A stretch of 64,000 bases of DNA from Ostrea edulis (Eukaryota). Under the pieces are notes generated by a model. It ran no database searches and had not been told where the DNA came from. It was given only the letters and a program-made list of their open reading frames with translations. Shown here one piece after another: positions 31,967 through 58,308 of this stretch (position 1 is the first letter of the stretch; each line of letters starts with the position of its first letter). Location of the stretch: the NCBI RefSeq assembly GCF_947568905.1, contig NC_079167.1, positions 124,001 through 188,000 of the forward strand, read 5' to 3'. The position numbers and the translations under genes were made by a program.

Positions 31967-32873
31967 ATGGCTTCAAAACATCTGGTACCCGAACAGCAAA
32001 ACTTTGTTCGACTATCTTTTGCCTGTTTGGATGAAATTCGAGTAATGCTGGGAGACATTCTACACTGCCAGATACCACCAGAAGATCTCTTCAAGAAAAT
32101 CCAAGCTACCACGACATTGTTAATCGGAAACCAACAGCTCAGTCCAGAACAATTAAAACTTTGTTATAATCCTTGTCCTTTTGTCCCAGACTATCAATAT
32201 TTCGATATCACCTTACTGTACAAGCTCATCCGGAACCTGTGTCAAACATTACAACCTTCACAAGGATGGGGACAAAAACCCCGCAAGACAGACATCAAAA
32301 TCGGAGATGATATTGAACGCCTCAGATTATTTAGAAATGGGATGATTGGACATGCGGGGTCTTCCTGTGTACCTGATGGTATATTTGCTTCCAAGTGGAG
32401 TGAGCTTGAAAATATTTTTAAGAGGATACAGGGATTTTTATCATTAAACGGAATCACAAAAAACTTCGTGGAACAACTTGTATCTCTCAAACGAACCGAC
32501 TTTGGTTGGCAGGATCACGAAAAGAGCGAAATGCGCTTGATGTTCGAATGTATTAAGCTCACAGCGATACCAAAACTAACAGTACAAGGTGATGAACAAA
32601 AGGTATGGGGAGAAAAGGCATGTTTTATGGCAAGGTATGAAGATGGCGATACATCAAATAACTGGCCTATCACGTGGCAAAAGATTACAGGAAACACAAT
32701 AAAACAGCTAGACATTAGTACAGAGAGGTACAGAGGTAGCTCCAGTCAACAACTGGTGATCCCAAGGGTTAGCAAAGATGACCAGGGAGAATATCGAGCC
32801 ACTGTATCACGTGAGGAGAAGGGAACGCACATTCACATCCCTAGTAACACCATCTACCTTACGGTGACAGGAG
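31967..32873 (+). CDS. Host gene copy B, coding exon 1: DZIP3-type HEPN plus first Ig-like domain
   Basis: Acceptor ttttag| at 31950; RLFRNGMIGH; DQGEYRATV; donor G|gtaatt; no signal peptide visible. Confidence 0.85.
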
Positions 32874-33046
32874 GTAATTGCTTGCATAATTATGGGTCAA
32901 AGTATTTTTAAATAATGGAATTACTAAAAAAAAAAAGAAATGATATAAGGTTTTTAAAATCGAACTGTTTAAGTACATGTAATATCAAAATTAATCGAAT
33001 CGATTGTGCATTCAAATATATATATTCCACATAATTATTATCTCAG

Positions 33047-33319
33047 ATTTACCAACTTTGGAAATAGAAAATGCAATATCTGAAGAAGACAGAATAATCA
33101 TTCATTACAACGTTAGTGTCGATGATCAATCCCCAGCTGTGCATAGCGTTATGTGGAGCAAAGATGGAGAACATTTAGAGAAAACTGGAGATAAGTACAG
33201 CGGTGGACAATTAATGGATACGTACTTAACGATACACTCTCCAACATTGAATGATGCTGGTCAGTACAGTTGTGAAGTTTCCAATGCCGTAGGACCCGAC
33301 ACGAAATCCATACATCTGA
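33047..33319 (+). CDS. Exon: Ig domain 2
   Basis: ctcag|...|gtaagt, 273 bp; DAGQYSCEVSNAVG. Confidence 0.85.
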
Positions 33320-33534
33320 GTAAGTTATTCCTATCTTAATAAAAATCAAATGGTGAAGATAGTGAACAGTTATCAATCTCATAACTTCTACGAAATTTAA
33401 AGTACAGCAAACACGGACCTCTGAGTATACTATAGATGAGATTGAATTTTGTTTTTAAACATCAACTTTGTTTATCCATTTTTATGATATACGTTATGAA
33501 CTTTTATCTAGTTTGTTTTTCTAATGAAAGGTGA

Positions 33535-34750
33535 AGATAATGAACAGTGATCAAACTCAAAAGCTACACAAAATAGACAGTTGGGCAAACACGAGCCTCT
33601 AGATATACCAGAAGTGGAATTAGGTACCTAGGAGGAGTAAGCATCCCCGTCACACTCGCCGTGAGCCCTAGATCGTGATCAAGAAAGTGGAGTTTTCTGT
33701 AGTAAAAATCATTGTGCCACAAATGGCCTAACAATCGGTATGAAACAGGATTTCACCTATTTATAGGCTGTACTGCCAAACTAGATCGTTATAACAACCA
33801 TAGAATTTGCAAAATGCTGCCTTTAAACGAAATTATTGAAACCCCTACACCACCAACTTGTTTATAAATAGCCTGCTTTGTTTTGAAAACTAATCATAGG
33901 CAGAAAAAGCTCTGTGGCTTGACCATCACTGAAGAGACATTATTTGTCGAAATGCGCATCTGGGGCATCAAATTAGGTACCGTAAAAGTTTTTCGTTAGG
34001 ACCCCTGAGCCACGGCCTCTGCTGGTGTCTCTACATTCCAGTAGCTAAATACTTCGTTACTAGCTTGAAAATACGGATATATATTCAATTGCTATGATCA
34101 AATTATGCATAGCTCTAATCCTTAGACGAATTTGACTTCAGGCTTTGGTACTCTGTTTTTCTTTTTAGTTTTTACAAATTTATTGTTATTTCGGGTTTCT
34201 GATATTTCCTTTTGAGCATCACTGAAGAAACTTTATTTGTAGAAATGTGCATCTGGTGCATCAGAATTGTTACCGTATAAGTTTTACATAAATGTGAGAA
34301 GCTGACGATGGAGATGCTAAAATCACCCCGTATGTCATAAAACTGAGTTGTTAGTTTGCCGTTAATATCAATTTTCAAAAAAATATCTAACTTTGAAGCA
34401 GAAATTGATGACTCCGCGGAGTCATTTATTTCGAGTTCACAAACATATATCGAATCGACATAGGAATGAAAATTATTATTGTTGATAGATGAAATGTCCT
34501 CTATGAAAGGTGGAAATAACGAACAGTGAGCAATCTCATAACTCCCACAAGCAATGCAAAATAGATAGATGGGCACGCACGGACCCCTGGACACAATAGA
34601 GGTGGAATCGGGTATCTAGGAGTAGGTATCCCCTGTCGACTAGTCACACCCGCCGTGAGCTCTATATCTTGATTAGGTAAACGGAATTACCCATTGTCAA
34701 AATCAGGGTACCAAGAACGGTTCAACAATCGCCATGAAACATGTCAAACT
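33535..34750 (-). mobile_element. Cluster of decayed Naiad 3' fragments with hammerhead-tail fragments between them
   Basis: Reverse complements of the Naiad thumb region and 3' UTR at about 33535-33905 and 34290-34750. Confidence 0.75.
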
Positions 34751-34861
34751 TGATTTCGAGTTTGGTTTTATATAAAAAGAAATAAATGACATTTGTGGGG
34801 GGGGGGGGGGCAAAATTTCATAAATGTTGCGTTTTCAATTTCAATCTATTCTTAAAATTAG

Positions 34862-35173
34862 GTGTGCCTTCCGTATCCATTATTGAGGTTCCAGAAGTTA
34901 TTGTAGGAAATCCTATCATCATTGTGCCTACCATTCAGTCTTGTCCAACACCAGTATCAGCAATATGGCAGAAAAATAACAGACATAATAATGAAGAGTT
35001 CGAAAGGCTAGAAATTAATGATTCCAAATACTTCGGGAGTAGCGATGATCCAGACGATCCGAGACTTGTCATGCAGAAAGTAACGCAAGAAGATGCATTA
35101 TATTACCGACTTATCGTGTCCAACGGGATAGCCCAGAGTGCAAGTAACACTATTTACCTGAAACTCATTGGAG
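34862..35173 (+). CDS. Exon: Ig-like domain 3
   Basis: ttag|...|gtagg, 312 bp; W..., DALYYRLIVSNG. Confidence 0.8.
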
Positions 35174-35331
35174 GTAGGTGCATACTTTTGTTGAGAAAAA
35201 AGTGAAATACATATTTCTCTTTGCGCAATTATGTACAGTACGAATGTATGAAATACTTTGTTTTATTTACTAAGAAGTATTTTCTTCTATCCTGATATCC
35301 TTGCCTATTTTACTTCAATTTTATTGAATAG

Positions 35332-35616
35332 GTGTCCCGTCTTTATATGTCCATCATGAAACGCATATTATGGAGAACAGTGTGACATTGGTATGTGAAA
35401 TGACCGTGCCAAATCATTCCCCAACGGTTTCTGATGTCTTTTGGACAAAAGATGACAGAAAGATTGACATTACAGGAAACGGAGAAAAATATTCAGGAGG
35501 GAGTATTGATAATCCCTCGCTAACTATCAAGACGGTGAACTCAAACGATGTGGGAATATATCAGTGTTGTGCGTCAAATTCTGTTGGAGAGATGTGCAGT
35601 GAGAAGATTTATCTTG
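35332..35616 (+). CDS. Exon: Ig domain 4
   Basis: atag|...|gtaaat, 285 bp; LVC..W..DVGIYQCCASNSVG. Confidence 0.85.
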
Positions 35617-36244
35617 GTAAATCAAGATGTCATATCATATCGTCCTATAAGCTATCTTGATCGTACATTTATATCGATCAGACGTTATCGATTACAGATT
35701 ATCATTGCGGCATTTATGAAATCAGCTGATTCAATAATGCAGCCCCGATACGGTTAAACTTGCCAAATAAAAAAAACTAACATTAGAGAAAGTGATCACG
35801 TGCGAAATAACATTAAAATCAAGCTTATCATTGCGTCTTGTTTGTCTGCGCTATGTTGAATACAGCTGATTCAGTAATGTAAATCAGACATGATTATACT
35901 CATAAGAATTATAGGAAGAGGAAGTTATCATGAGTATTATAACACTAAAATAATTAGAATCGTGATTTTATAGAAAAAGTTTCTAGCTTTATGAAGTATC
36001 AAACACAACTTAACTCATATTTCAGTGTAATATTCCTGTCTATCGAAAATTTTACCGACAGCTTGTTCAACACATAAAGATTCTGCGCTCACAGCGAGTG
36101 TGAACGGTCAACTAAAGTTTAAAAGTAAATTAATATTGGATTAGTGATATGTACAGGGAAATCCTTTATAAGTAATGAAATGTTCTAAATAGCGATTCAC
36201 ACACTCAACGGAAACTATAGTTAGTTATTTCATTATTTTGATAG

Positions 36245-36535
36245 GTCCACCTTCAATTGAGTTCGACAATCCAGACTTCGATGAATTACACAAAAGAGTC
36301 ACCTACATCGCTACGATCAAATCCATTCCTGTTGCTCTTAATGCTGAATGGAAAGTCAAACAAGATAGGAATGACGAATTTCAAGTTATAGATGTGCAAG
36401 ATCCGTTATACAGAGGGTCTATGATAACTTTGCCTCGTCCAAAACTGGTAGTAAACAAACACAAAGTCGAACAAGTAGAACCATTTCAACTTGAAGTTTT
36501 CAATTCCATCGGAAGTAGCAGAAAAAATACTCAAG
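36245..36535 (+). CDS. Exon: degenerate Ig-like domain 5
   Basis: atag|...|gtaac, 291 bp; similar to exons 1 and 3 (W, Y.GS, PKLVV, NSIG). Confidence 0.75.
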
Positions 36536-36719
36536 GTAACACAGAATTTCTTACATTCAGTTTTTCTGTCATCAACATATTTTGGTAGCAAAATTTCATA
36601 ATCACCTGCATATGGTGTTTATATCAACTTATTCGATACGAAAAAGCTTGTTATGCGTATGATCATCTTTTAAATAGAGACAGACTACTGCCAAATAAGT
36701 TGATGATAAGTTGTTAAGT

Positions 36720-37190
36720 AAGATGTTACAATAGGAGTGCCTTAGGGGTTCATATTGGGTCCATTGTTCTTCATTTTATTTGTTAACGATTATCCTAAAT
36801 ACCTAAAGCACTCAAATGCATTTGACGTAAAAGTTTGCAGACGACGTAAAATGCATATTTTCTGTGAAAGTTTCTTGCTTAAAGAATCAATGTGTACAGA
36901 CCAGGTTAGACATTCATCTATTTGTACACCAAGAAGTTTGGCCGTTTTAACAGTATCTAAAACAATATCTCCTACTTTGATACACATTTTTCTACACTTT
37001 GAGAGTTTTTGTGCAGTGCCAATCAACATACAGTGTGTTTTCATTAAATTCATCCTAAGTTTATTACTTTCCATCCATTTCATAGAGTTTAAAAGATCAT
37101 CATGTAACCTTTGCTCAATAACATCAATAGATTAATGTGAAACATCCTGAGATATATCATCTGCATATGTATTGTCAGCTTTTTTAGATT
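36720..37190. mobile_element. CR1/L2-like LINE RT fragment with internal inversion, nested in a Naiad fragment
   Basis: + strand GVP.GxILGPLFFILFVND (36733-36825); - strand YADD ... NKLRMNLMKT ... LGVQID (37190 to 36826). Confidence 0.7.
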
Positions 37191-37749
37191 GGTTGAGGCT
37201 ACTGACAAGCAAATTGATGATGCAGGAGTTTCGTTTAAAGTCTGCATTTCGCAAATCCTATGATCATTATAACGATATAGTTGCCAATACAACCCATCAT
37301 TGGGTCAAATGCTGTCTGACGTGTTTTTTTGCACACTGATTGTGATTCCGTTTAACTGAAAAAGATATCGGGCGTACATGAAAAACAAAATAAGGGGAAA
37401 TGCTCACTTTAAACAATACTGTTCAAATACTTATAACATTATTTTGTTTTTCAGTAACTTGCCTTGATTTAAAAGCTGATCATACAGAGAACAACTCTTG
37501 CGTATCGAATCAGTTAAGAAATATAAACACTAAATTATTTCATGAAAAGCGAAAACAATTGAATTCAATATAATTCTGTTTCCTTAGACATAGTTGTGGA
37601 CAGTCATGATGCTATTATAAACAAAGGTAAGATATCCCCAAATAAACCAATGCGTGCTCAACTTCTTCATCAATAGATATAATTTAAATTTTACATTTCA
37701 AAATTACGAGGAAATTAAATGTATCAAATTTTGACAATGTATATTTTAG

Positions 37750-37878
37750 AGATCCCAGTTCCTTTGATGAAATTCTACAGCAAAAGAGGTTCTAATGTTC
37801 TCTTTGCTAACCTCAGTGACGACCTGGTGAAATCAATTCCAGAGAATACACTTGACAGCCTCAAGCTCGTTCTTCTTG
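37750..37878 (+). CDS. Exon: N-terminal part of a death-effector-like domain
   Basis: ttttag|...|gtaagt, 129 bp; LFANLSDDL..NTLDSLKLVL. Confidence 0.7.
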
Positions 37879-38354
37879 GTAAGTTATACCTACCCATTAT
37901 ATACAGCTGGCACTTTGGAAACTGCTCCAACCTCTAGTAAATCCAGGGAGTCATGTTTCTATGTGGTCGGTGTTGATGTTTGGATTAGTAAGGGTTTGTA
38001 TTAGAGAATATTAACAGCCGAAAACTCAGCTTAGACATTCAAAACGTGTGTTTTCATCGATACCAATTAGAACATCGCTAGGTATATCCCTTATTTTTCA
38101 ACATAGGGTCAGGGTTACAACCAACTGCAGATTGTTAGGTCGTTCTTTTGATTACGGATATCTTTCTTTACCTCATCAAGATACAGGGCTAACGACGGAT
38201 GTGACCGATTGACAGAGGATGATTACTCCTATGTACCTGATCCGACCTGTACTGTGAACAGGGGTCCGTGTTTGTCCATCTCTTTATTTTCATTGCTTAT
38301 AAGTGTTACGAGTGATATATATCATTATATATCTACCACTACAATTGATTACTT

Positions 38355-38660
38355 GCATGTTCTATGGTCGTTATAACGATCTAGTTCGTCAATATAACCT
38401 CGCATTGGGTCAAATGCTGTCTGACGTGTTTCATACCGATTGTAAAGCCGTTGTTGGCACACTGATTTGACTGCGGATAACTCCGTTTACCTGATCAGGA
38501 TATGGGGCTCACGGCAGGTGTGACCGGTCAACAGGGGATGCTTACTCCTCCTAGGCACCTGATCCCACGTCTGATGTGTCCATGGGTCTGTGTTTGTCGA
38601 ACTATCTATTTTGTATTGCTTAAAAGAGTTATAAAATTGATTTATGTTCATTATCCTTAC
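38355..38660 (+). mobile_element. Naiad 3' end fragment
   Basis: ttctatggtcgttataacgatctagttcgtc... through the 3' UTR. Confidence 0.85.
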
Positions 38661-41600
38661 CATTCAGAGCTTGTAACACTCTTTTGATGGTTAAATCATG
38701 CATCATATGATGTGTTTTAAGGTAGTGATTGCAAAGCATCACACTATTTTCGTTTCCGATTCTGGAATACGTCAAGCGATAAGCATCAGTAATAACGACA
38801 GACGATGGAAACAAAGACTTGTCAGATATAACCAGACACATGATCAAGTATAAATATGTTTAGAAATATACAAGTAAACTAAAATACAAATGAAAAACCC
38901 TTTGTGTTTTTTTTTCAATATCTTTTAAATAATAGTTATAGTTTATTTCTCCATTATTCATATATAAATATATCCCAACCCCCGCTCCCCGGTTAATTGT
39001 AAGTCTTACAAAACTTAAAATCAATTCACAAACCACTGGGCCTATTAAATTTATAATAGATAATGTTATAAATTTCAAAACATGTATGTGGTGTTTGTGC
39101 ATAAAAATCTAAAATGCTGGATGTGTAATATCAGAGGGAAACATGGGTTATATAAACGCGTCATTTTGAGCAAAAATATTGACAATTTTAATAATATCTT
39201 TCCTAATTACACTATACATAGCTTTAAAACACTTTATTTTGCTGCAAGTATTATCATTGTCCACTTTAGGTCACCAAGAAATCATAGGAGTCTATTTTGT
39301 AACGTGAATGTTAAGACAAATCAAAAAGTGTGAATTTTGAATACAAAAGTTGCTGTTAATGATTTTCTCAATTAGTTCATTTATTTCATATAATTTAAAA
39401 AATAAAGAGAGTTTCGTTGTTTTGATAATCGCTTGGTTTGAAAGAGAAAGAGAAAAAATAATGTTGCAAGCAATACCACGTCACAATGCACACTTAACAT
39501 GGACTGTGTTATATTTTCCGTGTTTTAACATACACTTACAGAGCATAAATATACAAGAAATTTCAAACAGAACGTAGTAAAACATCTTAAAAGCAACAGT
39601 GCTATCATTCTATGTAAAAGTAATTCAATAGTAAACATCAAAACATATTTATAGTTTTAGCATGATACCCTCCGCCGTTGTCAGAATTTGAACACTTTTA
39701 AAAAACCATTTAAAAACACATCTTTTTAGACTTGCATATTATTAGTATTATAGGTGGTTATATCTTTGGTTTCTTTACCTTTATTTAAACATGACTTTTT
39801 CCAAGTGTATAAATGTATATTTATTTCAACTATTATATTTCATAGTATTTGATTATACGGCGTGGAACTTTTTTCATGCATATCATGTTTAAGATTTTCG
39901 TAATTTTATTTCACATTATTGATGTTTTTCTTGCATTGTCTTGATATTATCTGTCTTAGTGATATTATAATATCCTTTTACTACGTTTATAACATGCTGT
40001 ATCATTTTTATTGTGTGCTGCGCTTTAGAGTGGATATTTATAGTCATATAGGGCGCTATATAAATAGATAAATGTTATATAAATATTAAATACATGTAAG
40101 ATGCATATTTATTGTATTATCACCAACAGCATTTATGTAAGGAGGTGGAGGGGAGGGTAACTATAGTGTTCATAGCGCCATGGTAAACCTGAAAACCAAT
40201 ATTGATACTTTCAGAAAAAATTCCTACTAACATATGTTAAAACACATGTAAAAATAAAAAGAATTCATTGGTCTTTTTTTTTCAGGGGGTGAAAATATGT
40301 CTATTTTGGGGAATAATTGCCTTCTAAAAATTGCACAATTGCTCATAAGTAGCCGTGCTACTACTTCTTATGAAAATAAATGAATATCTTGATACAAATC
40401 ACATATCAATTTAAGCCTTAACTTCAATTTCATGGTACATTTGTATTACTTACTCTTTCTGTATCATTTTAAACACCATATGAAACACCTGTACCATTTA
40501 TTACAGAAAGTCGACAAGAAGGGTTAATGTGACAACCGTAGCGTCCCAATTTTAGTGAAAATCATATATGACTTTCATAATCAGTTATATATACTCATAG
40601 CTACAAAATATGTAAGAAGTCAACAAATTCATAGATTCATTGATTTTCAAAGACCCATGCAATCACTACCCTAACGAGCCATTCAATAAACGTTTAGAGT
40701 AATGAGAGCACTAATTATCTTAAACGATGGTCAGGCGGTATCACCCTGTACACGCACCTGTTAACTTGTTGAGTGACAAAAACTGTACAAAAAGTGTCAA
40801 TCAATTTGTAACTTGGAAAATCGCAAAAAAATACTCAATTAAGAAATAACAATGCTTTGGGGTATTTTCGCAAAATTTCTGATACACAAGAAGGACCTGT
40901 TACACAGTATTCTTATTCGATATGTTTTAACAAATTGGAAACGCAATTTTGTCGAATATTTGACCTGCTAAAATATTTCTTTCATGTACCATTAACTGCA
41001 CGAAACCCTGTATATGTGACCCCAATGGGATTTTTCAACACCAAGGAATGTTTTGATATGATAAATGTCCTAACTACCTTTCAGAGAGTGATTCACTCCC
41101 TTTGTGAAGATGATGACACAGCGAGAAATGGGACAATCATTTTCAAACCATACATGCACTCTTCCACCACTTGAATAAAGCAAAATTAACAGTGAACCTT
41201 ACAAAGTGTAAATTTAGTCAGGCTAACTTAGAATAGCTGGGTCATAAAGTAGGTTAAAGTCATGTTATTCCTATTTTGGCTAAAAGAAACAAACAAGTTA
41301 TTACAATTTTTCCGATTTGTAAAAACAAAAAATTAGTTGATTGTTAGAGGAATAAATGACTCTACAGCCCAGTAGCTAAGTACTTCGTTACTAGCTTGAA
41401 AATACGGATGTATATTTAGTTGCTGTTATAAAATCTAGAAATTCATTTCAAAATTAAGAATTATCTCCCACACGCATAGCTCTTATCCTTAGACGAATTG
41501 ACTCTGCTTTTTGGCACATTGTTTTCCCCATAATAGCTCTAAAACTTCATTATTATTTAGGATTTCAAATATTTCGGTTGAGCATCACTGAAGAGACATT

Positions 41601-45505: not shown

Positions 45506-45715
45506 GTTTAAATGAAGTTGATGCAGAATCAATAAAGGAGTTGAAATCCGTCACAGAGCTGCTCATGCTTCTTCAAGAGCATAAACTCTTCACTCAGACA
45601 GACGTGATTTTCATGCAATATTTACTAAAAAGAGCCGGATGTCAGAAATTGTATGAGAAATGCGTTCATTATGCTAGACAACAGAGAGCATTATGTTTTT
45701 TTGAAAAAAACCCAG
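45506..45715 (+). CDS. Exon: remainder of the death-effector-like domain
   Basis: atcag|...|gtaac, 210 bp; SVTELLMLLQEHKLFTQTDVIFMQYLLKRAGCQKL. Confidence 0.75.
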
Positions 45716-45842
45716 GTAACATTTGTTATGCATTGGATTGTTTAAGAAAGCATCATTCTTATAATCTTCAAACTGTAAACGAATTCAATTGATTAAACTA
45801 TAATTGATACCTCACTGAAACGAAATACCCATATCATTGCAG

Positions 45843-46139
45843 ACAATGGATTTAAGCACGTCAAGTTTCACGTGGCAGGGAATTTTGAGATGTATTCACG
45901 AGAGGACATTGAGAAGATCAGAATAACAGTCGTTGCTATGTTATGCTGCGAAGATGGTGATGTTGTGGTAGACAAACTTGGCCCCGATAAAAGCTTCATT
46001 GTAGTCTTAGCCATCAAGGAAATATTCGTCAGCAAAATCTTACATATGGATCAGCAACACATTAAGAAACTCTGTGATTTGAAAGTGGACTACTTCATTT
46101 TGAACGACAATAAGTATTACACTGAAAGTCTTCTGAAAG
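45843..46139 (+). CDS. Exon: uncharacterised alpha/beta domain (possibly TRADD-N-like)
   Basis: ttgcag|...|gtaag, 297 bp, open in frame; family name is a tentative recollection. Confidence 0.65.
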
Positions 46140-46544
46140 GTAAGAATTTACTCGGGATATCAGACTAATTTTGTAATCTAATAGATATGGATAAAAACGA
46201 GATTGTTAAAATTTCCAATTTTCATAACAATATTTTATGTTCCAATCTTGCCCAAACACATTTGGGTTTTCTTCAGACTCTCTTATCATTATCGTGCAGC
46301 GATAAATACTAATACCCTGAACTTTATTTCGCAACCCTCAACTGTGTTTACATATACATGTTAGAACTATTTCCATATTCTGCATTTCATTGAATCTACA
46401 AACATGTACCAACTGAGCTGCAATGAATATTTTGTAAATACTAAAACCAATATGTTTATTTCCTCAATTGATCTTATTATAGAATACAATACTTGGTTCT
46501 CTTAGATATTGAGAAAGATAGACAAGAGTGGGTCTTCTGAAGCA

Positions 46545-47775
46545 TTAATGAAAGGTGAAGATAACGAACGGTGATCAATCTCATAACTCCTATAAGCAAT
46601 ACAAAATAGATATTTGGGCAACCACGAACCCCTGGACACACCGAGAGGTGGGATCAGGTGCCTGGGAGAAGTAAACATCCCCTGTCGACTGGTCACACCC
46701 GCCATGAGCCATATATAATAATTAGGTAAACGGAGTTATCCGTAGTCAAAATAAATGTGCCAAGAACGGCCTAACAATCGGTATGAAACATGTCAGACAG
46801 CATTTAACCAAATGGTAGGTTGTATTGACAAACTAGATCGTTATAACGATCATAGAATTTCCAAAATCTGGAGTTCAATCGAGACTGTTGAAACCCCTTT
46901 ACAATCAACTTCTTTGTCAGTGGCTTGCCTCGATTTAAAAACTGACTATACGCAGAACAAGCTCTTGCGTATCGAATCAGTTGAGAGATTTAAACACCAT
47001 ATCCAGGTGATAATAGAATATTCCTACATAGATTTGGGGAGTTGACGATGGAGAAGCTGAATCATCCCGTTTGTCAAACATTTCAGTTGTCAGTTTGCTG
47101 TTAACGCCTCCTTTCAATAAAAATATCTAAGTATAAAGTAGAAGTAAACGACTCTGTATAAACACCCTCACAAACAAAATGATGTTTCGTGGGTTTTTAT
47201 GCCTGGTTTTAAGCTAGCAACTTATACGCAGCTTATGCAACTTATATAGTCATTATAACAACTTATTTTGCCAATACTACCTGCCATTGGATCAAATACT
47301 GCCTGACGTGTTTCATACCAATTGTTAGACTGTTCTTGTAAATTTGAATTTGAATTTGACTACGGATTACTCATTTCTACCTGGAAAAGTTACAGGGTTT
47401 ACGGCTGTGACCAGTCAAGAGGATATGCTTATCATCCCTCTGTACCTGATCCCACCTCTAACATATTCAGGGATTCAAGTCGCCCAAGTCTTAATTTCAT
47501 ATTTCTTATGAAAGGTGAAGATAACGAACAGTGCTTAATCGCATAGATCCCATAAGCAGTACAAAATAGATAGTTGGGCAAACACGGACCCCTTGGACAC
47601 ACCAGAGGTGGGATCAGGTGCCTAGGAGGAGTAAGCATCCACTATCGACCTGTCACACCCACCCTGAGCGATCTATTTTGATCAGGTAAACGGATTTATC
47701 GTAGTCAAAATCATTGTGCCATGAACGGTCTAACAATCGGTATGAAACACGTCAGACAGCTTTTGACCCAACGAT
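46545..47775. mobile_element. Cluster of Naiad fragments in both orientations
   Basis: Minus copy about 46545-47140, plus remnant about 47200-47500, minus remnant 47505-47775 continuing after the MITE at 48679. Confidence 0.8.
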
Positions 47776-47776
47776 A

Positions 47777-49439: not shown

Positions 49440-50290
49440 GGTGTCAATGACAAGTAAACATAACTTTCCAAAATCATCCAGGCTAAATGTAAATACATTT
49501 ACACAACATTCCCCACCTCTAAAGGTTTTAATGACAATGAAAACTCAAATATACAGCGTACATCAATGAAATCAACAACAAAAGAACTAAACATTCTCAA
49601 GACACTCTTGACAAGGCATCTGCTATAACATTGCCTCAGCCTTTGATGTTTGATATCATTGTCATACTCTTGCAATGGTAAACTCTATCTTGTGAGTTTT
49701 TTTATTCTTGTTTGACCATTTATGCAAAATCGTGAGAGGGTTGTAATCCTTAGAAACATGAATTGGCTGTACAGTAACATTCAAATAAACAATATAATGT
49801 TGCAAAGCTAACAGCAAACCAAGACACTCTTTTTCAATAGCTGAATAATTCTGCTCGCAATTTGAACGTTTCTTGAAACAAAGCAGCACCGATTCCTACA
49901 TCACTAACATCTATAGTAAGCTTAAACTGCTTAGAAAAATCTGGAGCCGAAAGAACTGGACTACTCATAAAAGCAGATTTAATATTACAAAATGATTCAT
50001 TGCAGTCCTTTGTCGATACAAATTTAACCCTCATTTACACTAAGTTAGTAAGTGGACCAACTGTTGAAGAAGAATTTGGACAAAATTTTCTGTAAAAGCC
50101 TACCATGCCCAAAAATCTCATTAACTCTTTCTTGCTTGTAAAAATCAGGAACTCTGCATTAGCCTCCACTTTAGCCATAATAGGTGTAACATAACGTTGA
50201 CCTACTTTATGACCTAAATACTCTACAGTAGCGTAACAAAGGTCACTCTTTGCAAGGTTCACTGTAGAATTTGCTCTTGCCAGAATGTCT
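49440..50290 (-). mobile_element. Decayed 3' end of a Gypsy-like element: RT end, RNase H, then PPT and LTR start
   Basis: FLGMVGFYRKF, DVSDVGIGA, NYSAIEKECL, frameshifted DIKH..ADALSR, then agaggtggggaa-TGTTGTG at 49520-49502. Confidence 0.7.
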
Positions 50291-50537
50291 AAGAATTAGG
50301 AAATATTCCCCCCATGTGTTGCTGTACATTATCTGGTCAGCGCTTAGGGCCATTGAGCAGGGAGGGATCTTTATCGTGCCATACATGCTGTGACAATAAA
50401 TTTGTAAGAGCTAAAAGGAAAACTAGAGTGCCAAAAAACTGGAGCCAAATTCGTCCAAGGATCAAAACTATGCATCATGGAGATATAATCCTTGATTTTG
50501 AAATGAATTTTTAAATTTTATCCTAGCAATTAAATAC

Positions 50538-50645
50538 ACGGGACCACGGTTTTTGCGGTCACATCCGAAGGACCGCCCCATTTAGTCGCCTCTTACAACA
50601 AGCAAGGGGTACTGAGACCTATTCTAACCCGAATTTTCACGGGAT
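50538..50645. mobile_element. GC-rich dispersed repeat fragment, probably SINE-derived
   Basis: ccgaaggaccgccccatttagtcgcctcttac...ctaacccg resembles a common mollusc repeat (recall only). Confidence 0.35.
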
Positions 50646-51339
50646 GGTTTGAAACGAAGTTACAGCTCTATTCTTAAGGGCAGTTGTTTTTGTCTGAATG
50701 TTTCTCGACTTCCTAAATGTTAGCGGAAAATTTCAAAATACATTACCGAAACAAACTTAATGTGCATATGACTTCATTTTTGTGGGTCTTGAAACAAATT
50801 GATTGAAGATTAAATTTAACAAGTAATCACTAAACGTATTTACTTCAATTGAGCTTCTAGTTCTAGTTGTATATCATATTTTTGAAGTCCTTACTTCTAT
50901 AAGCAAATCTGAAATACACAACAACAGTACGTATATGACAGGTGTACCCTGTCACAGTTTATTTTTCGAAGCTATTGAAAATGTAGGTGTTTAGTAAGGA
51001 CTTAATCATTTATCCGTATATCTCTTAGTGGATCATATTTATGGGTTTTCCTTGTCTATTTTCGGTTACATTTTCCACATCACGCATCTTGCAGAAAGGT
51101 GTACCATCATACGTGTTTACTTAGTGTCACTGTGAAAGTAAGAACAAATTCGGACTGTTGATGTATCGTGACCAGAGAGTAGGTTACTGTGACCTCATTT
51201 CAAAATTACAAATCACGCCATGACAGATCTCCAGGATGAGAATAAATTATAAGTCTTATGCATATAGTTCCAGAATGGCGTAGCATGCACTCTAGTGGTG
51301 CACGTTATTCAATTTCAGAATAACTCTTGTGATTTATAG

Positions 51340-51453
51340 GTTCTTACCGGACAAAAACAAAAGAAGAGCAATGGAGAGAAAAGGACAAATCGTTTAAACC
51401 TATTGCTGATATTATCGGAGTAAAGCATCCAGAGCACTTGGTTTCTCGAATAG
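51340..51453 (+). CDS. 114-bp mini-exon, copy 1 (38-aa basic repeat)
   Basis: tttatag|...|gtaagt; GSYRTKTKEEQWREKDKSFKPIADIIGVKHPEHLVSRI. Confidence 0.7.
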
Positions 51454-52365
51454 GTAAGTCTGCGATTTTGAAAAATCTAGCTGTTATTCTTTCTTTATTT
51501 TCTATGGTCATTCAACAACTGGAGTCATGATGAAAAAGTGAAAATAATGAATAGTAATCAAGATACCATGACCTAAGACATGAAGATCTATTTAGATTTC
51601 AAACGAAATTACAGCACTATTCTTAAGGGCATCAACAGAAATTATCGTGCAGTTATGTTTATCTGAATATTTCTTGACTTTTAGCGGAAAATTGTAAACG
51701 GCATTATGGAATCAAAATAAAAGTTCATTTTTGTGGAACCCAGAAGCACCAACTCTTCAAGCAAATTGATTGAAGATGAAATTGGCTCAACAATTCTTAA
51801 ACGTATTTATCTACTTCAACTGAACTTTTAGTTCTAGTTGTATATTATATTTCAGAAGTCCTTGCTTCTATAACCAATTCTGAAATATACTATAACAGTA
51901 TATCACATTAACTCTCTATGATATTGAAAAATGTGTCTATCTTGATGGGTCATATTTAAGGGTTTTCTTCGATTCTTTGCTAGTTTTCTAGTGCTCGGTT
52001 ATAGGTTAGGTTTAGGATAACCCTAACCCACATGACGGATCTTGTAGAAAATGTGCCATTATTCAAAAGTACCTTTCTATGACTTCATTTTGGAATTATA
52101 TTGAAATACCTGTCCACCTAGTGTCACTGTGAAAGTAAGAACAAATTTGAACAATTGATTTATCTTGGGAAAGATGTGTCGTGACCAGAAAATAGGTTAA
52201 TGTGACCTCATTTCAAAATCACAAATCACGCAATGACAGCTTGTGATCTCCAGCGTGGTAATATATTGTAAGTCTTATACATATTTTTTCCAGAAGAGCG
52301 TATGATGTACATGTACACTAGTGGTGCACGTTATTCAATTTAAGAATAACTCTTGTGTTTTATAG

Positions 52366-52479
52366 GCTCTTACTCGACAAAAACAAAAGAAGAGCAATGG
52401 AGAAAAAAGAACAAATCATCTAAATTTAATGCTGATCTGATCAGATTGAAGCATCCAGCGCACTTGATATCTCGAGAAG
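52366..52479 (+). CDS. 114-bp mini-exon, copy 2
   Basis: Same splice sites and frame. Confidence 0.7.
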
Positions 52480-53089
52480 GTAAGTCTGCGATTGTCTCTT
52501 TTGAAGAATATGATTGTTATTCTTTCTTTATTTTCTATGATCATTCAACAACTTGAATCACCATGAAAAAGTGAAAATAACGAATAGTAATCAAGATACC
52601 ATGGCTATCTGATGCATGTTGGAGGTAATGTGTCGCAAATAGAATGCAGGTAATTAATGCCTCATTGCGAATGTTTAAGGCTATATATTGTTAAAACCCA
52701 AAGGCAAACTGAATCAATGACAAGGAATTCAAAGATTTAACAATTTAAAGAGAAATATATTAATGAAATACTACTAACATACATTAGGGCTAAACAAAGT
52801 ACATCAAACAGAGTGCAATGATGGTTTACTACAGAGCTGAATCGACCTTTAATTCCAATCCAAGTCCTTAACCCTAGTCCTGATGTAATTCTGCAGAGTC
52901 CTGCTGAACAGACGATTCTAGCCTTATTATTCAAGCTGTTCTGCTGAAATGAAGCTACCAGTGTATTTTATCGGTTTTTACATTATCTCTATATTAGATC
53001 CTGACCAATGTCGTTCTAAAATTAGAACATATCGAATCCCGTCTAGGTCACAAGTTTCTGATAACTAATAACTAAACTGTATGAAAAAC

Positions 53090-53595
53090 ACGATGATTTC
53101 AGCTTCTCCATATTTATGTAGCAATATTCCATTATCACCAGGATATGGTGTTTATATATCTCAACTGATTCGATACGCTAGGGCTTGTTCTGCGTTTAGT
53201 CAGTTTTTAAATTGAGGCAAGCTACTGACAAACAAATTGATGGTACAGTAGTTTCAACAGTCTCGATTGAAGTCAGCAGTTCGCCAATTCTATGGTCGTT
53301 AAAACGATCTAGTTCGTCAATACAACCTATCATTGGGTCAAATGCTGTCTGACATTTTTCATACCGATTGTTAGGCCGTTCTTGGCACACTGATTTTGAC
53401 TAAGGATAACTTCGTTTACATGATCAGGATGTAGGGCTCACGGCGAGTGTGACCAGTCGACAGGGGATTCTTACTCCTCTTAGGCACTTGATCCCACCTC
53501 TGGTATGCCCAGGGGTCTGTGTTTGCCCAACTATCTATTTTGTATTGCTTGTAGGAGTTATGAGATTGATTACTGTTCGCTATCTTCACCTTTCA
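53090..53595 (+). mobile_element. Naiad 3' fragment
   Basis: Thumb-coding region plus 3' UTR. Confidence 0.85.
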
Positions 53596-54752
53596 TATTC
53601 AAGTTTGTTACACGTTACACCCCCTTTTGATTTAAATTGACAACAATACAATGAATGTCATACATTCCAAAGCTGATCATAATTATTTGATGTCAAGCAT
53701 ACTACTGTTTCTTTTCATAACCTTGAGTACAAGTTCCCTATTCTTGTGAATAAAGTTGCATTAATTAGTTATTACCATACATTCTATAAAAAAAACACAA
53801 TCAAACAGCAAGATGGGAGGCTATCACCAAGATTCACACTACTGGGTGGGGTATAACAAGTACCAAGGAATGGAAACTCGTCTTGAGGAGTTGCTATTCA
53901 TGAACTCCAAAAAAAAACAACGGACGTTTTTAATTTCAGTTCCACGAAAAAGCTCTAATTCAATTAGATCCAGCACTGCGTTAGTTGTAGTAGGACGTCA
54001 AACATAGACCGTGATGTCTTACCTGTCGGTTTTTGGGTTGTGTGTTTTTTTTGTTTTTTGGTCATTATAGAACAAGTACTTTACAAAACTGCATCATAAA
54101 CATAATAAATTGCAACATTTACAAGTTGTATTTTGTGTTTAAACAAACGTTCACGTGGGTGTTTTTATTTTTTCTAAGTACAACGATTCAAAGTAGCTAA
54201 AAACCTTAATTTTAAAAATTTGCTGTTTTTCACCAATGGACACAGGACACATTTGCATGTATTGATACAAAAATCTATTTGGTAAGCATTTTATGTGCTA
54301 AGCCATAATGATTTGCAATTGTTCAACCTACTCGGTGAACATGAGTGCACAGTATGCACCCGTTAGGCCGGGAAATAATAGAAAGGAAAATTTAAAGATG
54401 TCTTATTTGAAGTGCATATTTCCATTATCACTGAGAATCCAGGGACAGATTTTTATACCAATATTGTAAATATGGGTGTTCTCTAGCAACTGAAAAAAGT
54501 TTTGATTGAATCTTAAACACTACCATTAGATTGATTGGTGTTTGAAAATCAGTGATTTTGCGAATTTTGTATAGCTTATAGGAGTATTAAGATTGATACA
54601 CTCCCCATTAATTTCAAAAGACGTATAAACAGCTGCGATATCAGACAGTAGTCATGATTTATACAGAGACAAACTGACATCGTTAATATTCTTTCCCTAG
54701 GAAATACAATGTGTTCTAATGTAACATTATTTCAAAACTTCTACTTACGCAG

Positions 54753-55394
54753 CATCAAAGGAATTGGACATTACCATCCAGAAATATTATGCTTCTCAGA
54801 TAACACACTTATTAGAAATTAATTTCCGAAGGATTCTAAGACGATATGTTCTAGAGTCCGATTTCGTGGCAAAAATCGAGGAGTGCAAAGAAAAACTCTT
54901 ACCTCTACTTGATGATGCACATCAAAGCTTGCTGTATCCAAAGAGAAGATCATTTTCTGTAAGTTATAGAGATTTAGATCTGCATCTATTGTACATTCTA
55001 CTCAAGAGTATATGTGGCATTGCTCCACACGAACGAGGTTGGGGTAATTCTCCAAATCCCACAGACACGTCTCTAGCCGCCAACATCGACAGAAACATGG
55101 ATATTCACAAAACCTACTGTGGCGATGTAGCTCACATGATTCTCAAACAATCAGATTTCGACAAAGTCATGAAAAAAGTCGTACGAATTTCTGAAAGGAG
55201 AGATGAAAACCTCGATGGTTCAACAGAGGATGTAAGCATACACGATCAGGACACTACAACCATACACGTCCTGGAGGAAGTTTTAAAACCTCTAAGAGAT
55301 AATATTATACACCATTATAGCAAAGAAAATGAAGACTTGATACATCAGTTTACTCAGTTTAGAAAACAAGAAGAAGCTTTAGGAGCTCTAAGAG
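54753..55394 (+). CDS. Exon: second, degenerate DZIP3-type HEPN domain plus helical tail
   Basis: cttacgcag|...|gtaag, 642 bp; LLYP, DLDLHLLYILLKSICGI, GWGN, SLAANIDR; the R-N...H motif is replaced by HKTYCGD. Confidence 0.75.
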
Positions 55395-58194
55395 GTAAGA
55401 TTATATATCATTATGCAAATAAGTAAGAGGAATTCATTTTAGTAGCATTCAGTTTTGACGGATGAAAATCACCATACAACTTTGTTACGAATACTTATTC
55501 TGGATTACAAGGCAATACATATACGAAGAGAGTCCAGATCATATCTTTCAGGGTATGATACCCATGGCTATCTGATACATGTTGGAGGTAATATGTCGCC
55601 AATAGAATGTAGGAATAGTACCTAAGTGCGAATGTTTAAGACTATACATTGTTAAAGGTCAGAATAAACCCAAAGACAAACTGAATCAATCACTAAGAAT
55701 TCTAAGACTTAGCAATTTAAAGACAAGTATAATTATGAAAAATTTCTAACTTACAATAGGGTTAAGCAAAGGTCATAAAAGATAATGTACAAGCAGGGTT
55801 TACCACAGAGCTGAATCGACCTTTAATTCCAATCAAATTTCTTAATCCTAGTTCTGATGTAATCCTGCAGATTCCTGCTGAACAGACGATTCTAGCCTTA
55901 TTATTCAAGCCATTCTGCTGAAATGAAGCTACCAGTGTCTTTTGGGGGTTATTACATCATCTTTATATTAGACTCTGACAAATGTTCTAAAATTAGAACA
56001 TCTCGAATATTGTCTAGGTCACAAGTATCAATTAAGAACAAAAGTATTAAATAACTCTTCCCCCTTTAATACAATTAAAATGTGACCCTCGGAGACTAAC
56101 AGTCTACCAGCAGAGGCTTCGACCCAGGGGTCATAATGTAAAACTTATACGGCACCAATTTTGATGCACCAGATGCGCATTTATATATCCGTGTGCTCAT
56201 TTGCATTCATATATTAGTTCGATATATCCCTGTGGTCTCGAGGTCTGAGACACCACGGAATCCTCCTTGTCTCCTTAGTGATTGTGTTTTTTATTGAAGA
56301 TAAAATAATGACGACATGCTTGTGGCTCGGCTTTGTGACATGCGAGGTGGTTTTGGCTTCTCCATCGTCAGGCTACTGACAAACAAGCTGATGTTTCAGG
56401 GGTTTAAATAGTCTCGATCTAATAGAATGCACTGGTGATAATGGAATATTGCTAATAAATATGAGAAGTTGACGATGGCAAAGCTGAATTAATTAGGGTT
56501 AGGGTCATAGAATTGAAGTGTTAGATTACCGTTAATATCTGTTTTCCATAAGCTATTAAGGTGAATTTAAAGAACAACATATACAAGGACAATCTAAAAG
56601 TGTAATTTTACTTCGACAGGAAGAACGATTACCTCACCAGAGATAGAGAAATCACTAGGACCCCAGTACTCACGATATCAGTCAGACGTGAGAGGAAGAA
56701 CAGATTTTTACCCGAAAATGTCAATTCCAGACTTTGACGACGATATATTTACGTCAGTAATTCGAAAGGATTCATCTAGGATATCTTCTCATGGTAAGAG
56801 GTTTGTGCTGAATTTGGACAAATTGAAATTGACATAAAAACAGTTTTAAATAGATCTTTGTATTTATGTCAGAAGTTCAAATAGATTCATTTACTCCTCC
56901 TGGGCACCTGATCCCACCTCTGGTGTGTCTAGGGGTCCGTGTTTCCCCAACTATCTATTTTGTATTGCTTGTAGGAGTTATGGGATTGATCACTGTTCGT
57001 TATCTTCACCTTGCATCTAAGCAATATGTTCATGGTAAGACTCGGGTGGTTAATTCATTGACTGGTTTTAAAATTTAAAATTCAGGCCCCTTTACGAGGA
57101 TCTACTGAAAATGACATCTAACAAGGGGATCCTTACTCCTCCTGGGCAGGGTCTCTATTTTGTTATGTGTGTTATATAATCTTTTGATGTATGTTAAATA
57201 TCACCTTATCCTTGTGTGTCCAGGGATCCGTGTTTGCCCAACTCTCTATTTCATATTGCTTATAGCAGTTATGAGATTGATAACTGTTCGTTATCTTCAC
57301 CTTTCATGGATCATTGTTCATTATATTCTCCTTTCACTTTACATCTGATTATATATTATGCGTTCTGCAAGCATGGTTTCCAGTTTTGTCTGATACCTAC
57401 CACGACACAAGACATGAAGATATATTTAGATTTCAAACGAAATTAGAAATATATTCTTAATAGCATCAACAGAACTTATCGTGCAGTTATGTTTATCTGA
57501 ATATTTACTGATTTCCTAAATGTTAGCGGAAAATTGTAAAATGCATTACGGAATCAAAATTAATGTGTATATGAGTTCATTTTTGTGGGACCCGGAAGCA
57601 CCAACTCTTCAAGCAAACGTATTTATCCACTTTTGAGCTTTTAGTTCTAGTTGTATATTATATTTTAGAAGTCCTTGCTTCTATAACCAATTCTGAAATA
57701 CACTATAACAGTATATCACATTAAGTCTCTATGATATTGAAAAATGTGTTTAGCAAGGACGTAATCATTTATCCGTGTGTATCTTGATATATTTATGGGT
57801 TTTCATCGTCTCTTTGCTAGTTTTCTAGTGCTCGGTTATGGGTCAGGGTTAGGATAACCCTAACCAACATGACGGATCTTGTAGAAAGTGTGCCATTATT
57901 CAAAAGTACCTCTCCATGACCTCATTTTGGAATTATATTGCAATACCTGTCCACTTAGTGTCACTGTGAAAGTAAGAAGAAATTTGAACAATTGATTTAT
58001 CTTGGGGAAGAGGTGTCGTGACCAGAAAATAGGTTACTGTGACCTCATTTCAAAATCACAAATCACGCAATGACAGCTTGATATCTCCAGCATGGTAATA
58101 TATTGTAAGTCTTCTACATATTTTCCAGAAGAGCGTATCATGTACACTAGTGGTGCACGTTATTCAATTTCAGAATAACTCTTGTGATTTATAG

Positions 58195-58308
58195 GCTCTT
58201 ACCCGACAAAAATAGAAGAAGAGCAATGGAGAAAAAAGAAGAAATCGTCTAAATCTAATGCTGATATGATCGGCTGGAAGCATCCAGAGCACTTGATTTC
58301 TCCGAAAG
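58195..58308 (+). CDS. 114-bp mini-exon, copy 3
   Basis: Same splice sites, open frame. Confidence 0.7.

What the first reader, a model, noticed from the sequence alone, without database searches (positions are those of the whole stretch)
31967..58308. Modular HEPN-(Ig)5-DED-X-HEPN protein built entirely from phase-1 exons
Twelve exons join in frame to about 1,230 aa with no signal peptide or transmembrane segment visible. The order is putative RNase HEPN, five Ig-like domains (several lacking the canonical cysteines, as expected for cytosolic Ig), a death-effector-like domain, an unknown domain, basic repeats and a second HEPN. Linking an RNase effector, Ig sensor or scaffold modules and a death-fold suggests an intracellular immune or cell-death protein of a lineage-expanded family. 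Every intron is phase 1, allowing free exon shuffling and skipping.
Basis: partly seen in the sequence, partly recalled or inferred. Interest (0 to 1): 0.7.

Follow-up and report, generated by a model that had tools for sequence, protein, structure and literature searches.

The report
Oyster HEPN-Ig-DED-TRADD-N immune gene
This is a flat-oyster copy of an already described, oyster-expanded family of cytosolic immune or cell-death proteins (an RNase-like HEPN head, five Ig domains and a DED plus TRADD-N adaptor pair); it may carry a second HEPN domain, but nothing yet shows that all twelve proposed exons make one protein.

Summary
The sequence features are real. Twelve AG/GT-bounded, phase-1 exons sum to 1,229 codons, and both HEPN domains, five Ig-like domains and a DED hold up in profile or fold searches.

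The "unknown domain" is a TRADD-N domain of the NCOA6 type. The order HEPN, Ig repeats, DED, TRADD-N, variable C-terminus is the oyster lineage-specific expansion described by Kaur et al. 2021 (eLife) in Crassostrea. The window is Ostrea edulis chromosome 4, near the chromosome start.

The single 1,230-aa protein is not shown:
- The model ends at a splice donor with no stop codon.
- It misses a 39-nt exon.
- NCBI's model for this locus (840 aa) stops after the DED.
- The "basic repeats" evolve neutrally.
- An NHL propeller exon, the terminal exon in the chromosome-8 paralogue model, lies 3.9 kb past the window.

Evidence that the second HEPN belongs to the gene:
- It has no ATG at its start.
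- dN/dS is 0.53.
- A second locus in this genome has the same order.
- Two Saccostrea RefSeq models join TRADD-N to this HEPN type.

No RNA data were available. Verdict: a new member of a known kind, of modest interest.

The parts
31967..32873 (+). Exon 1: start codon, HEPN_DZIP3 domain (motif RNGMIGH) and Ig-like domain 1; ends in phase 1
   Evidence: Pfam PF18738 E 8.5e-22. It is 100% identical to residues 1-302 of the O. edulis RefSeq model P0159. R, N and H of the motif are invariant in 7 homologues.
33047..33319 (+). Ig-like domain 2 exon (phase 1-1)
   Evidence: Pfam I-set 37.2 bits, above cutoff; splice sites; present in P0159.
34862..35173 (+). Ig-like domain 3 exon, without the cysteine pair
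   Evidence: Pfam Ig_3 E 2.3e-4, below cutoff; aligns with Ig5-type domains; present in P0159.
35332..35616 (+). Ig-like domain 4 exon, the only one with the canonical cysteine pair
   Evidence: Pfam Ig_3 38.1 bits, above cutoff; present in P0159.
36245..36535 (+). Ig-like domain 5 exon, no cysteines
   Evidence: No Pfam hit. AlphaFold model has pLDDT 90, and all top 50 Foldseek matches are Ig domains (basigin, titin, obscurin; TM 0.6-0.74).
37588..37626 (+).
   Evidence: Encodes residues 690-702 of RefSeq model P0159; AG/GT borders.
37750..37878 (+). DED exon a (helices 1-2)
   Evidence: Aligns to the N-terminal third of the DED alignment; conserved in the C8 paralogues and in Saccostrea.
45506..45715 (+). 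DED exon b (helices 3-6). The RefSeq model reads past this donor to a stop at 45790-45792.
   Evidence: Pfam DED E 4e-4, below cutoff. The family profile hits solved DEDs at 7e-11. P0159 tail.
45843..46139 (+).
   Evidence: 142 homologues found. 13 of 53 homologues hit Pfam PF13820, best E 6.9e-6. The model has pLDDT 92.5 and an RRM-like beta-alpha-beta-beta-alpha-beta fold; TRADD-N 1f2h gives Z 6.1. dN/dS is 0.47 against the C8 copy.
51340..51453 (+). Basic linker exon b1 (114 nt, phase 1-1)
   Evidence: Low-copy repeat, 6 copies in the genome. dN/dS among copies is 1.05. Homologous b exons are coding in the RefSeq C8 paralogue model P0161.
52366..52479 (+). Basic linker exon b2
   Evidence: Same evidence as for b1.
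54753..55426 (+). Second HEPN_DZIP3 exon. It has a phase-1 acceptor at 54753 and a possible donor at 55394; alternatively the frame runs on to a stop at 55424-55426.
   Evidence: Pfam E 4e-15. The first ATG lies inside the HEPN domain. dN/dS is 0.53 against the C8:430290 copy, p 0.002. This HEPN type follows TRADD-N at C8:0.43 Mb and in two Saccostrea RefSeq proteins.
56620..56793 (+).
   Evidence: 79% identical to residues 975-1025 of the C8 paralogue model P0161; AG/GT borders.
58195..58308 (+).
   Evidence: It lies in a 3.9-kb block that is 96% identical to C8:76.52 Mb.
63054..63243 (+). Fourth b copy, frameshifted
   Evidence: Located; three-frame translation shows the break.
18279..28828 (+). 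Upstream truncated duplicate of the gene's first two exons. Its HEPN exon is split by the retroelement pair at about 18859-27841.

Best explanation
The locus is an Ostrea edulis member of the oyster-specific family built as N-terminal DZIP3-type HEPN RNase, Ig repeats, a DED-TRADD-N adaptor dyad and a variable C-terminal module. Shown: the exons, their phases, the domain identities, and that the first part (HEPN1, Ig1-5, linker, DED) is an annotated gene. Inferred: the in-phase TRADD-N exon 127 nt downstream belongs to the same transcript. Also inferred: the transcript can go on through symmetric linker exons to the second HEPN exon, and possibly to an NHL beta-propeller exon 3.9 kb beyond the window. 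Because all these exons are phase 1-1, alternative inclusion would give several in-frame isoforms, including a short form ending just after TRADD-N, as RefSeq isoforms of a Crassostrea gigas relative suggest. Proposed mechanism, inferred from domain knowledge only: the protein is cytosolic. The largely cysteine-less, titin-like Ig array binds or scaffolds a ligand. The DED-TRADD-N dyad acts as a switch and homotypic adaptor that connects it to other proteins carrying the same dyad (RIG-I-like, cGAS-like, PARP14-like, STAND NTPases). HEPN1, with an intact R-N-x4-H motif, is the RNase effector that needs dimerisation. HEPN2, whose motif is off-register and not conserved across its clade, more likely acts as a regulatory or pairing partner than as a second nuclease.
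For: - **Domains:** Pfam HEPN_DZIP3 twice and Ig domains; Ig5 fold; DED family profile against solved DEDs at 7e-11, and DEDs above Pfam cutoff in more distant X-bearing proteins.
- **X is TRADD-N:** PF13820 is hit in 13 of 53 homologues.
- **Family already described:** Kaur et al. 2021, text and source table listing 'HEPN+Ig+Ig+Ig+Ig+DED+TRADDN-NCOA6' with or without Beta-propeller or Mab-21.
- **Annotated part:** RefSeq model P0159 matches exons 1-7 exactly.
- **Chromosome-8 paralogue:** model P0161 runs HEPN-Ig5-DED-TRADD-N-a-b-c-b-NHL propeller. NHL exons follow DED-TRADD-N exons at 8 loci, including C4:191931.
- **HEPN2 linkage:** only two HEPN2-type exons exist in the genome, and both lie 2-9 kb downstream of a TRADD-N exon on the same strand. 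Saccostrea cucullata XP_062566132.1 and S. echinata LOC133179911 join TRADD-N to this HEPN type. The exon has no ATG at its start.
- **Selection:** dN/dS is 0.44 for the gene against its C8 paralogue and 0.53 for HEPN2.
Against: - NCBI's model for this very locus ends after the DED at 840 aa.
- No O. edulis protein of 678-2,158 aa with an HEPN2-type domain was found in the protein database.
- No run on record as RNA holds the HEPN2 exon, and the three holders proved to be DNA.
- HEPN2 sits inside a recently rearranged, TE-rich tandem repeat, and similarity to the C8 copy stops at the exon borders.
- b exons evolve neutrally and b4 is broken.
- Several neighbouring family copies are decayed.
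- Every functional statement is inference from domain families; nothing was assayed.
Confidence: 0.6

Rival explanations
1. The gene ends where NCBI annotates it, or just after the TRADD-N exon. The b, c and HEPN2 exons downstream are unexpressed relics of a rearranged 3' region. On this view HEPN2 is an exon-sized copy of the chromosome-8 type gene that landed in the repeat array.
For: RefSeq model of 840 aa. The first poly(A) signal after the annotated stop is at 46750, just past the TRADD-N exon. C. gigas has 821-970 aa forms ending after TRADD-N. There is no RNA holder. The array is a tandem repeat with neutral b copies.
Against: HEPN2 keeps a 214-codon open frame, in-phase AG/GT borders and dN/dS of 0.53 (p 0.002). 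The same X-then-HEPN2 order occurs at C8:0.43 Mb and in two Saccostrea gene models.
Confidence: 0.25
2. There are two genes: HEPN1-Ig5-DED-TRADD-N, and a separate downstream gene made of HEPN2, linker exons and the NHL propeller.
For: HEPN_DZIP3 is usually N-terminal in this genome's 88 or more copies. An intact NHL exon follows at C4:191931. The 9-kb TE-filled gap after the TRADD-N exon could hold a promoter.
Against: No ATG in the open segment until inside the HEPN domain, and a phase-1 acceptor at its start. Saccostrea models place this HEPN type after TRADD-N in one protein. The C8 paralogue model links TRADD-N to the propeller through the same linker exons.
Confidence: 0.1
3. The whole locus is a decaying pseudogene in a cluster of broken family copies near the chromosome start.
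For: The upstream duplicate is split by a retroelement. The C4:78 kb copy has an indel in TRADD-N, C4:89 kb has a broken propeller, b4 is frameshifted, and the C8 copy's Ig5 matches in two different reading frames (suggesting a frameshift; not followed up).
Against: All thirteen exons from 31967 to 55394 are open with consensus splice sites. dN/dS is 0.44 with p 3e-11. NCBI annotates a protein-coding model not marked as low quality.
Confidence: 0.05

Closest known systems
Crassostrea gigas HEPN+Ig x4+DED+TRADD-N(NCOA6) proteins, with or without beta-propeller or Mab-21+TPR (e.g. LOC105331445, LOC105323062, XP_011454060.1; Kaur et al. 2021, eLife, PMC8195603)
   Same: Same order of N-terminal DZIP3-type HEPN, Ig repeats and DED-TRADD-N dyad, followed by a variable C-terminal module. 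A propeller exon lies downstream here too. RefSeq isoforms of LOC105331445 differ by 49-206 aa and include a short 970-aa form, which fits cassette use of symmetric exons.
   Different: Different genus (Ostrea). Five Ig-like domains are recognisable here rather than four. The published table rows read here (parts 100-101) list no member with a second HEPN after TRADD-N together with the N-terminal HEPN-Ig part. TRADD-N+HEPN is listed there only for C. virginica membrane-type proteins.
Ostrea edulis LOC125667384 (P0161, 1,358 aa), the paralogue at C8:76.5 Mb
   Same: 89% identical first exon and the same exon order through TRADD-N. It shares the b and c linker exons, and an NHL propeller exon lies downstream of both.
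   Different: It has no second HEPN exon and has an extra linker exon 'a' that the window lacks.
Saccostrea cucullata XP_062566132.1 (1,233 aa) and S. echinata LOC133179911 (1,072 aa)
   Same: The only database proteins found with HEPN, Ig repeats, DED, TRADD-N and a second HEPN of the same clade. They are 45-50% identical and colinear with the window's exons.
   Different: They are Gnomon predictions in another genus. HEPN2 is in or next to the terminal exon, followed by a charged repeat tail or a 28-aa exon. They have four Ig-like domains, and exon 1 is split by an intron.
Human DZIP3/hRUL138, DEDD2 and TRADD; Cas13 as a two-HEPN analogue
   Same: DZIP3 shares the HEPN family (PF18738). DEDD2 shares the DED followed by TRADD-N arrangement. 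Cas13 (from general knowledge) shows that two HEPN domains in one chain can build one active site.
   Different: No orthology. DZIP3 has TPR and RING domains, not Ig, DED or TRADD-N. Cas13 is unrelated apart from the HEPN fold. The Cas13 comparison is an analogy that was not tested here.

Membership tests
HEPN_DZIP3 (PF18738) | Profile match above Pfam's gathering score | tested here: met
   HEPN1 scores 77.9 bits and HEPN2 56.3 bits against a cutoff of 27.
HEPN_DZIP3 (PF18738) | Rx4-6H catalytic motif, usually with N after R (Anantharaman 2013; Takeuchi 2022) | tested here: inconclusive
   HEPN1 has RNGMIGH, with R, N and H invariant in 7 homologues. HEPN2 has RNMDIH, and most of its clade has R-x4-H. 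Profile alignment places this string 5 residues upstream of the HEPN1 motif, and two clade members have lost it (RIMDIS, NIMDIY).
Immunoglobulin-like (I-set / Ig_3) | Profile match or Ig beta-sandwich fold for each of the five units | tested here: met
   Ig2 and Ig4 score above cutoff. Ig1 and Ig3 fall below cutoff (E 1.6e-3 and 2.3e-4). Ig5 is supported by its predicted fold, whose matches are all Ig domains, and by alignment with Ig3.
Immunoglobulin-like (I-set / Ig_3) | Conserved B-F strand cysteine pair | tested here: not met
   Only Ig4 keeps both cysteines; Ig5 has none. This is common in cytosolic Ig domains and does not exclude the fold.
Death effector domain (PF01335) | Profile match above the gathering score | tested here: inconclusive
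   The window's exon b alone scores 20.9 bits against a cutoff of 35.9. The two exons were not joined for a search. Homologous DEDs preceding the same TRADD-N domain reach 44-53 bits. A family profile that includes both window exons hits PEA-15, caspase-8, FLIP and FADD DEDs at 7e-11 to 1e-6.
Death effector domain (PF01335) | RxDL charge-triad motif in helix 6 | tested here: not met
   The window has GCQKL where relatives have RxDL.
TRADD-N, NCOA6 clade (PF13820) | Profile match and RRM-like two-layer alpha+beta fold | tested here: met
   13 of 53 aligned homologues hit PF13820 (best E 6.9e-6) and 3 hit PF20694; the window copy alone does not. The model has a beta-alpha-beta-beta-alpha-beta fold at pLDDT 92.5. 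TRADD-N 1f2h gives Z 6.1 with 88 residues aligned, not distinguishable from other ferredoxin-like folds.
Oyster HEPN-Ig-DED-TRADD-N expansion (Kaur et al. 2021) | N-terminal HEPN, Ig repeats, DED immediately followed by TRADD-N, then a variable C-terminal module, in one protein | tested here: inconclusive
   Exon order, strand and phases fit. A single transcript is not shown: the annotated model stops after the DED and no RNA data were available.

The most novel reading that the evidence does not exclude
One locus offers alternative C-terminal modules (stop after TRADD-N, a second HEPN, or an NHL propeller) through choice among symmetric phase-1 exons. The second HEPN, whose catalytic status is unclear, pairs with the N-terminal active HEPN in the same chain, Cas13-like, to gate RNase activity until the DED-TRADD-N switch is triggered.
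Probability: 0.12. Interest if true: 0.6.

Novelty: new member of a known kind. Interest (0 to 1): 0.3.

Why it matters
The family is a striking example of invertebrate innate-immune domain shuffling, and no member has been studied at the bench. This locus adds an Ostrea member and a clear exon-level view: every module is a symmetric phase-1 exon. It also adds a little-noted variant with a second HEPN after TRADD-N. The finding does not open a new question by itself. Its value is as an annotation correction (TRADD-N and the downstream exons are missing from the current model) and as a candidate for expression studies in a species hit by Bonamia and herpesvirus disease.

Tried and rejected
- **RNA evidence.** The one run search, made with the HEPN2 exon, returned three runs of unknown kind. 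Laying them on 51300-57299 showed contigs running straight across both exon borders at even depth, so they are DNA. All reported joints were between repeat copies.
- **Sequence search for X.** Searching X against solved structures gave nothing, and Foldseek gave no match below E 0.001.
- **More exons between Ig5 and DED.** A tblastx search against paralogues gave mostly all-frame repeat matches. The mini-exon and DED exon a were found only later through Saccostrea and RefSeq proteins.
- **b-like peptides in relatives.** None were found in the 142 X-bearing proteins.
- **HEPN2 as the certain last exon.** I first took conservation of 'GALRGKI' across the 55394 donor as proof. I withdrew this because S. 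echinata splices at the homologous donor.
- **Data limits.** The annotated neighbourhood of P0159 is withheld.
- **Joined protein.** The joined, spliced protein was never built or searched. All searches were exon by exon or used natural database proteins.
- **N run.** The N run at 3500-3640 was left alone.
Full report
**Origin of the window.** The window is G000:C4:124001-188000 of an 895-Mb assembly. Two NCBI Ostrea edulis proteins found later sit on contigs of 94,441,566 and 77,126,126 nt. These are exactly the lengths of C4 and C8 here, and the proteins match the DNA at 100%. The genome is therefore the European flat oyster, and the locus lies near the start of chromosome 4.

**Check of the observation.**
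Each has AG/GT borders, every internal exon is a multiple of three, and every intron is phase 1.
- The exons sum to 3,688 nt, which is 1,229 codons plus one base. This reproduces 'about 1,230 aa'.
- The chain ends at the donor of the last exon (58308) with no stop codon, so it is not a complete reading frame.
- No N-terminal hydrophobic leader or convincing membrane segment is present.
- NCBI's model for this locus is P0159 (840 aa, named unc-89-like). It uses the first seven exons with identical borders, which is independent support.
Every search was made exon by exon or with natural database proteins.

**Domains.**
- *HEPN.* Pfam finds HEPN_DZIP3 in exon 1 (E 8.5e-22) and in the 54.7-kb exon (E 4e-15).
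- *Ig.* Ig2 and Ig4 pass Pfam's cutoffs, while Ig1 and Ig3 fall below them. Ig5 has no hit but aligns with Ig3-type units. Its predicted structure (pLDDT 90) matches only Ig domains such as basigin, titin and obscurin. Only Ig4 keeps the cysteine pair.
- *DED.* The DED is split over two exons (37750-37878 and 45506-45715) that tile a full DED alignment. A family profile hits PEA-15, caspase-8, FLIP and FADD DEDs at 7e-11 to 1e-6. More distant relatives carrying the same downstream domain have DEDs above Pfam's cutoff. The RxDL motif is not kept in the window's copy.

**Domain X is TRADD-N.**
- A profile of X from the window and two paralogues found 142 proteins.
- In the long ones, X always directly follows a DED. 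The pair precedes a RIG-I-like helicase, a Mab-21 (cGAS-like) domain, PARP14-type RRMs, nSTAND3-ankyrin, Roc-COR or a HEPN.
- X folds with high confidence (pLDDT 92.5) as beta-alpha-beta-beta-alpha-beta. Structure searches give only generic ferredoxin-like matches, among them TRADD-N (1f2h, Z 6.1).
- Scanning the 53 aligned homologues one by one gives Pfam NCOA6_TRADD-N (PF13820) in 13 of them, best E 6.9e-6.
- This agrees with Kaur, Iyer, Burroughs and Aravind 2021 (PMC8195603). [quoted passage not shown] They also describe DED-TRADD-N dyads on PARP14-like proteins.
- Anantharaman et al. 2013 and Takeuchi et al. 2022 had already noted the oyster expansion of DZIP3-type HEPN domains. This genome has at least 88 such exons.

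**What lies after TRADD-N.**
- The 'basic repeats' are a 114-nt exon-like unit, b, present six times in the genome. Four copies are in the window and two are in the paralogue at C8:76.5 Mb.
- The b copies sit in a tandem unit of about 5 kb together with a reverse-transcriptase element. Their flanks are as conserved as the exon. One block (57721-61656) is 96% identical to the chromosome-8 copy.
- dN/dS among b copies is 1.05, and b4 (63054-63243) is frameshifted.
- NCBI's model of the chromosome-8 paralogue (P0161, 1,358 aa) nevertheless uses the b exons. It runs TRADD-N, a, b, c, b and ends in an NHL beta-propeller exon.
- The window has an intact c exon at 56620-56793.
- The closest relatives of the propeller exon lie 3-27 kb downstream of DED and TRADD-N exons at eight loci. 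One of them is C4:191931-192824, only 3.9 kb past the window's end.
- In the chromosome-8 copy the propeller acceptor is phase 1. Everything from TRADD-N to the propeller could therefore be joined in frame, with or without any cassette.

**Does the second HEPN belong to the gene?**
- For:
  - The exon is an open 214-codon segment with a phase-1 acceptor and no ATG until inside the domain.
  - Its only close relative in the genome (59% identity at protein level, 80% at DNA level) lies 1.8 kb downstream of a TRADD-N exon at C8:0.43 Mb. All other HEPN exons are 43% identical or less.
  - dN/dS between the two is 0.53 (p 0.002).
  - Two RefSeq proteins of another genus have the colinear order HEPN, Ig, DED, TRADD-N, HEPN of this clade. 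They are Saccostrea cucullata XP_062566132.1 and S. echinata LOC133179911. In both, the TRADD-N exon is followed by the HEPN2 exon, directly or through a 37-aa linker exon.
- Against:
  - NCBI's model for this locus reads past the DED donor to a stop at 45790-45792 and ends at 840 aa.
  - No O. edulis protein of 678-2,158 aa with this HEPN type is in the database.
  - No RNA evidence exists. The three runs that hold the exon are DNA, with contigs crossing both exon borders.
- The first poly(A) signal after the annotated stop is at 46750, beyond the TRADD-N exon. A short form ending just after TRADD-N is therefore plausible, like the 970-aa isoform of C. gigas LOC105331445.
- I put the chance that HEPN2 is part of at least one transcript of this gene at about 0.6.
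- The C-terminus stays open. The frame can run past 55394 to a stop at 55424-55426. Alternatively the donor at 55394, which S. echinata uses at the homologous place, can lead on to exon c, b3 and the propeller.

**Catalytic motifs.** HEPN1 has RNGMIGH, with R, N and H invariant in seven homologues. HEPN2 has RNMDIH, and most of its clade has R-x4-H. MAFFT and hhalign both place this string five residues upstream of the HEPN1 motif. Two clade members have lost it. Whether HEPN2 is a nuclease is therefore undecided.

**Selection and state of the cluster.**
- Against the chromosome-8 paralogue the gene shows dN/dS of 0.44 (p 3e-11).
- dS is 0.09-0.13 in exon 1 and 0.33-0.74 in later exons. This points to recent sequence exchange between the two chromosome-end regions.
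- Neighbouring copies are decayed. An upstream duplicate of exons 1-2 (18279-28828) is split by the retroelement pair noted earlier by this scan. The copy at C4:78 kb has an indel in TRADD-N, and the copy at C4:89 kb has a broken propeller exon.

**Conclusion.** The sequence features and domain calls are right, and the immune or cell-death reading is right but already published for Crassostrea. The specific 1,230-aa protein is an incomplete and unproven splice model. The locus is best filed as a new Ostrea member of the HEPN-Ig-DED-TRADD-N family. It has a probable second HEPN and a likely NHL propeller option beyond the window. All mechanistic statements are inference from domain families.

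Noticed in passing
window 18279-28828: A truncated tandem duplicate of the gene's first two exons (HEPN 95%, Ig1 92%, Ig2 68% identical). Its HEPN exon is the 'oyster gene exon' interrupted by the head-to-head Penelope-like pair reported earlier.
   Followed up: partly
proteins P0008, P0021, P0082/P0149, P0015, P0023, P0032, P0075, P0059 (Saccostrea): The DED-TRADD-N dyad sits in front of a RIG-I-like helicase, a Mab-21 (cGAS-like) domain, PARP14-like RRMs, nSTAND3-ankyrin NTPases and a Roc-COR GTPase. It looks like a shared adaptor module across candidate pattern-recognition proteins.
   Followed up: partly
window 57721-61656 versus L011 (C8:76520035-76523972); exon 1 versus L008: Divergence from the chromosome-8 paralogue is mosaic. 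One 3.9-kb block is 96% identical, and exon 1 has dS 0.09 against 0.3-0.7 in later exons. This suggests gene conversion or exchange between end regions of chromosomes 4 and 8.
   Followed up: partly
window 58516-60371 (also 52640-52935, 55600-55750, 63372-63512): A reverse-transcriptase element with three long open segments (162, 203 and 268 aa) follows each b exon copy and is part of the ~5-kb tandem unit. The same element follows the b exon on chromosome 8.
   Followed up: no
window, e.g. 38481-38684, 46502-46705, 47432-47638, 53410-53637, 56854-57075, 57115-57345, 60409-60594, 61697-61966: A short repeat that translates to '...GMLTPPRHLIPPLVCPGV.VCPTIYFVLL...' occurs many times on both strands in the introns. 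It is probably an abundant small mobile element.
   Followed up: no
G000:C4:191931-192824 and seven other loci: A distinct subfamily of NHL beta-propeller exons lies 3-27 kb downstream of DED and TRADD-N exons at eight loci. More than a hundred further NHL exons of TRIM-like type are scattered over chromosomes 8 and 10.
   Followed up: partly
L005:209-871 (C8:430209-430871): The only close paralogue of the second HEPN has RIMDIS in place of R-x4-H and a stop right after 'GALRGKI'. An NHL exon follows 27 kb downstream at C8:458190.
   Followed up: partly
window 45790-46750: NCBI's model ends by reading into the 127-nt intron before the intact TRADD-N exon. No AATAAA or ATTAAA occurs until 46750, so the current annotation probably truncates the gene.
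   Followed up: partly
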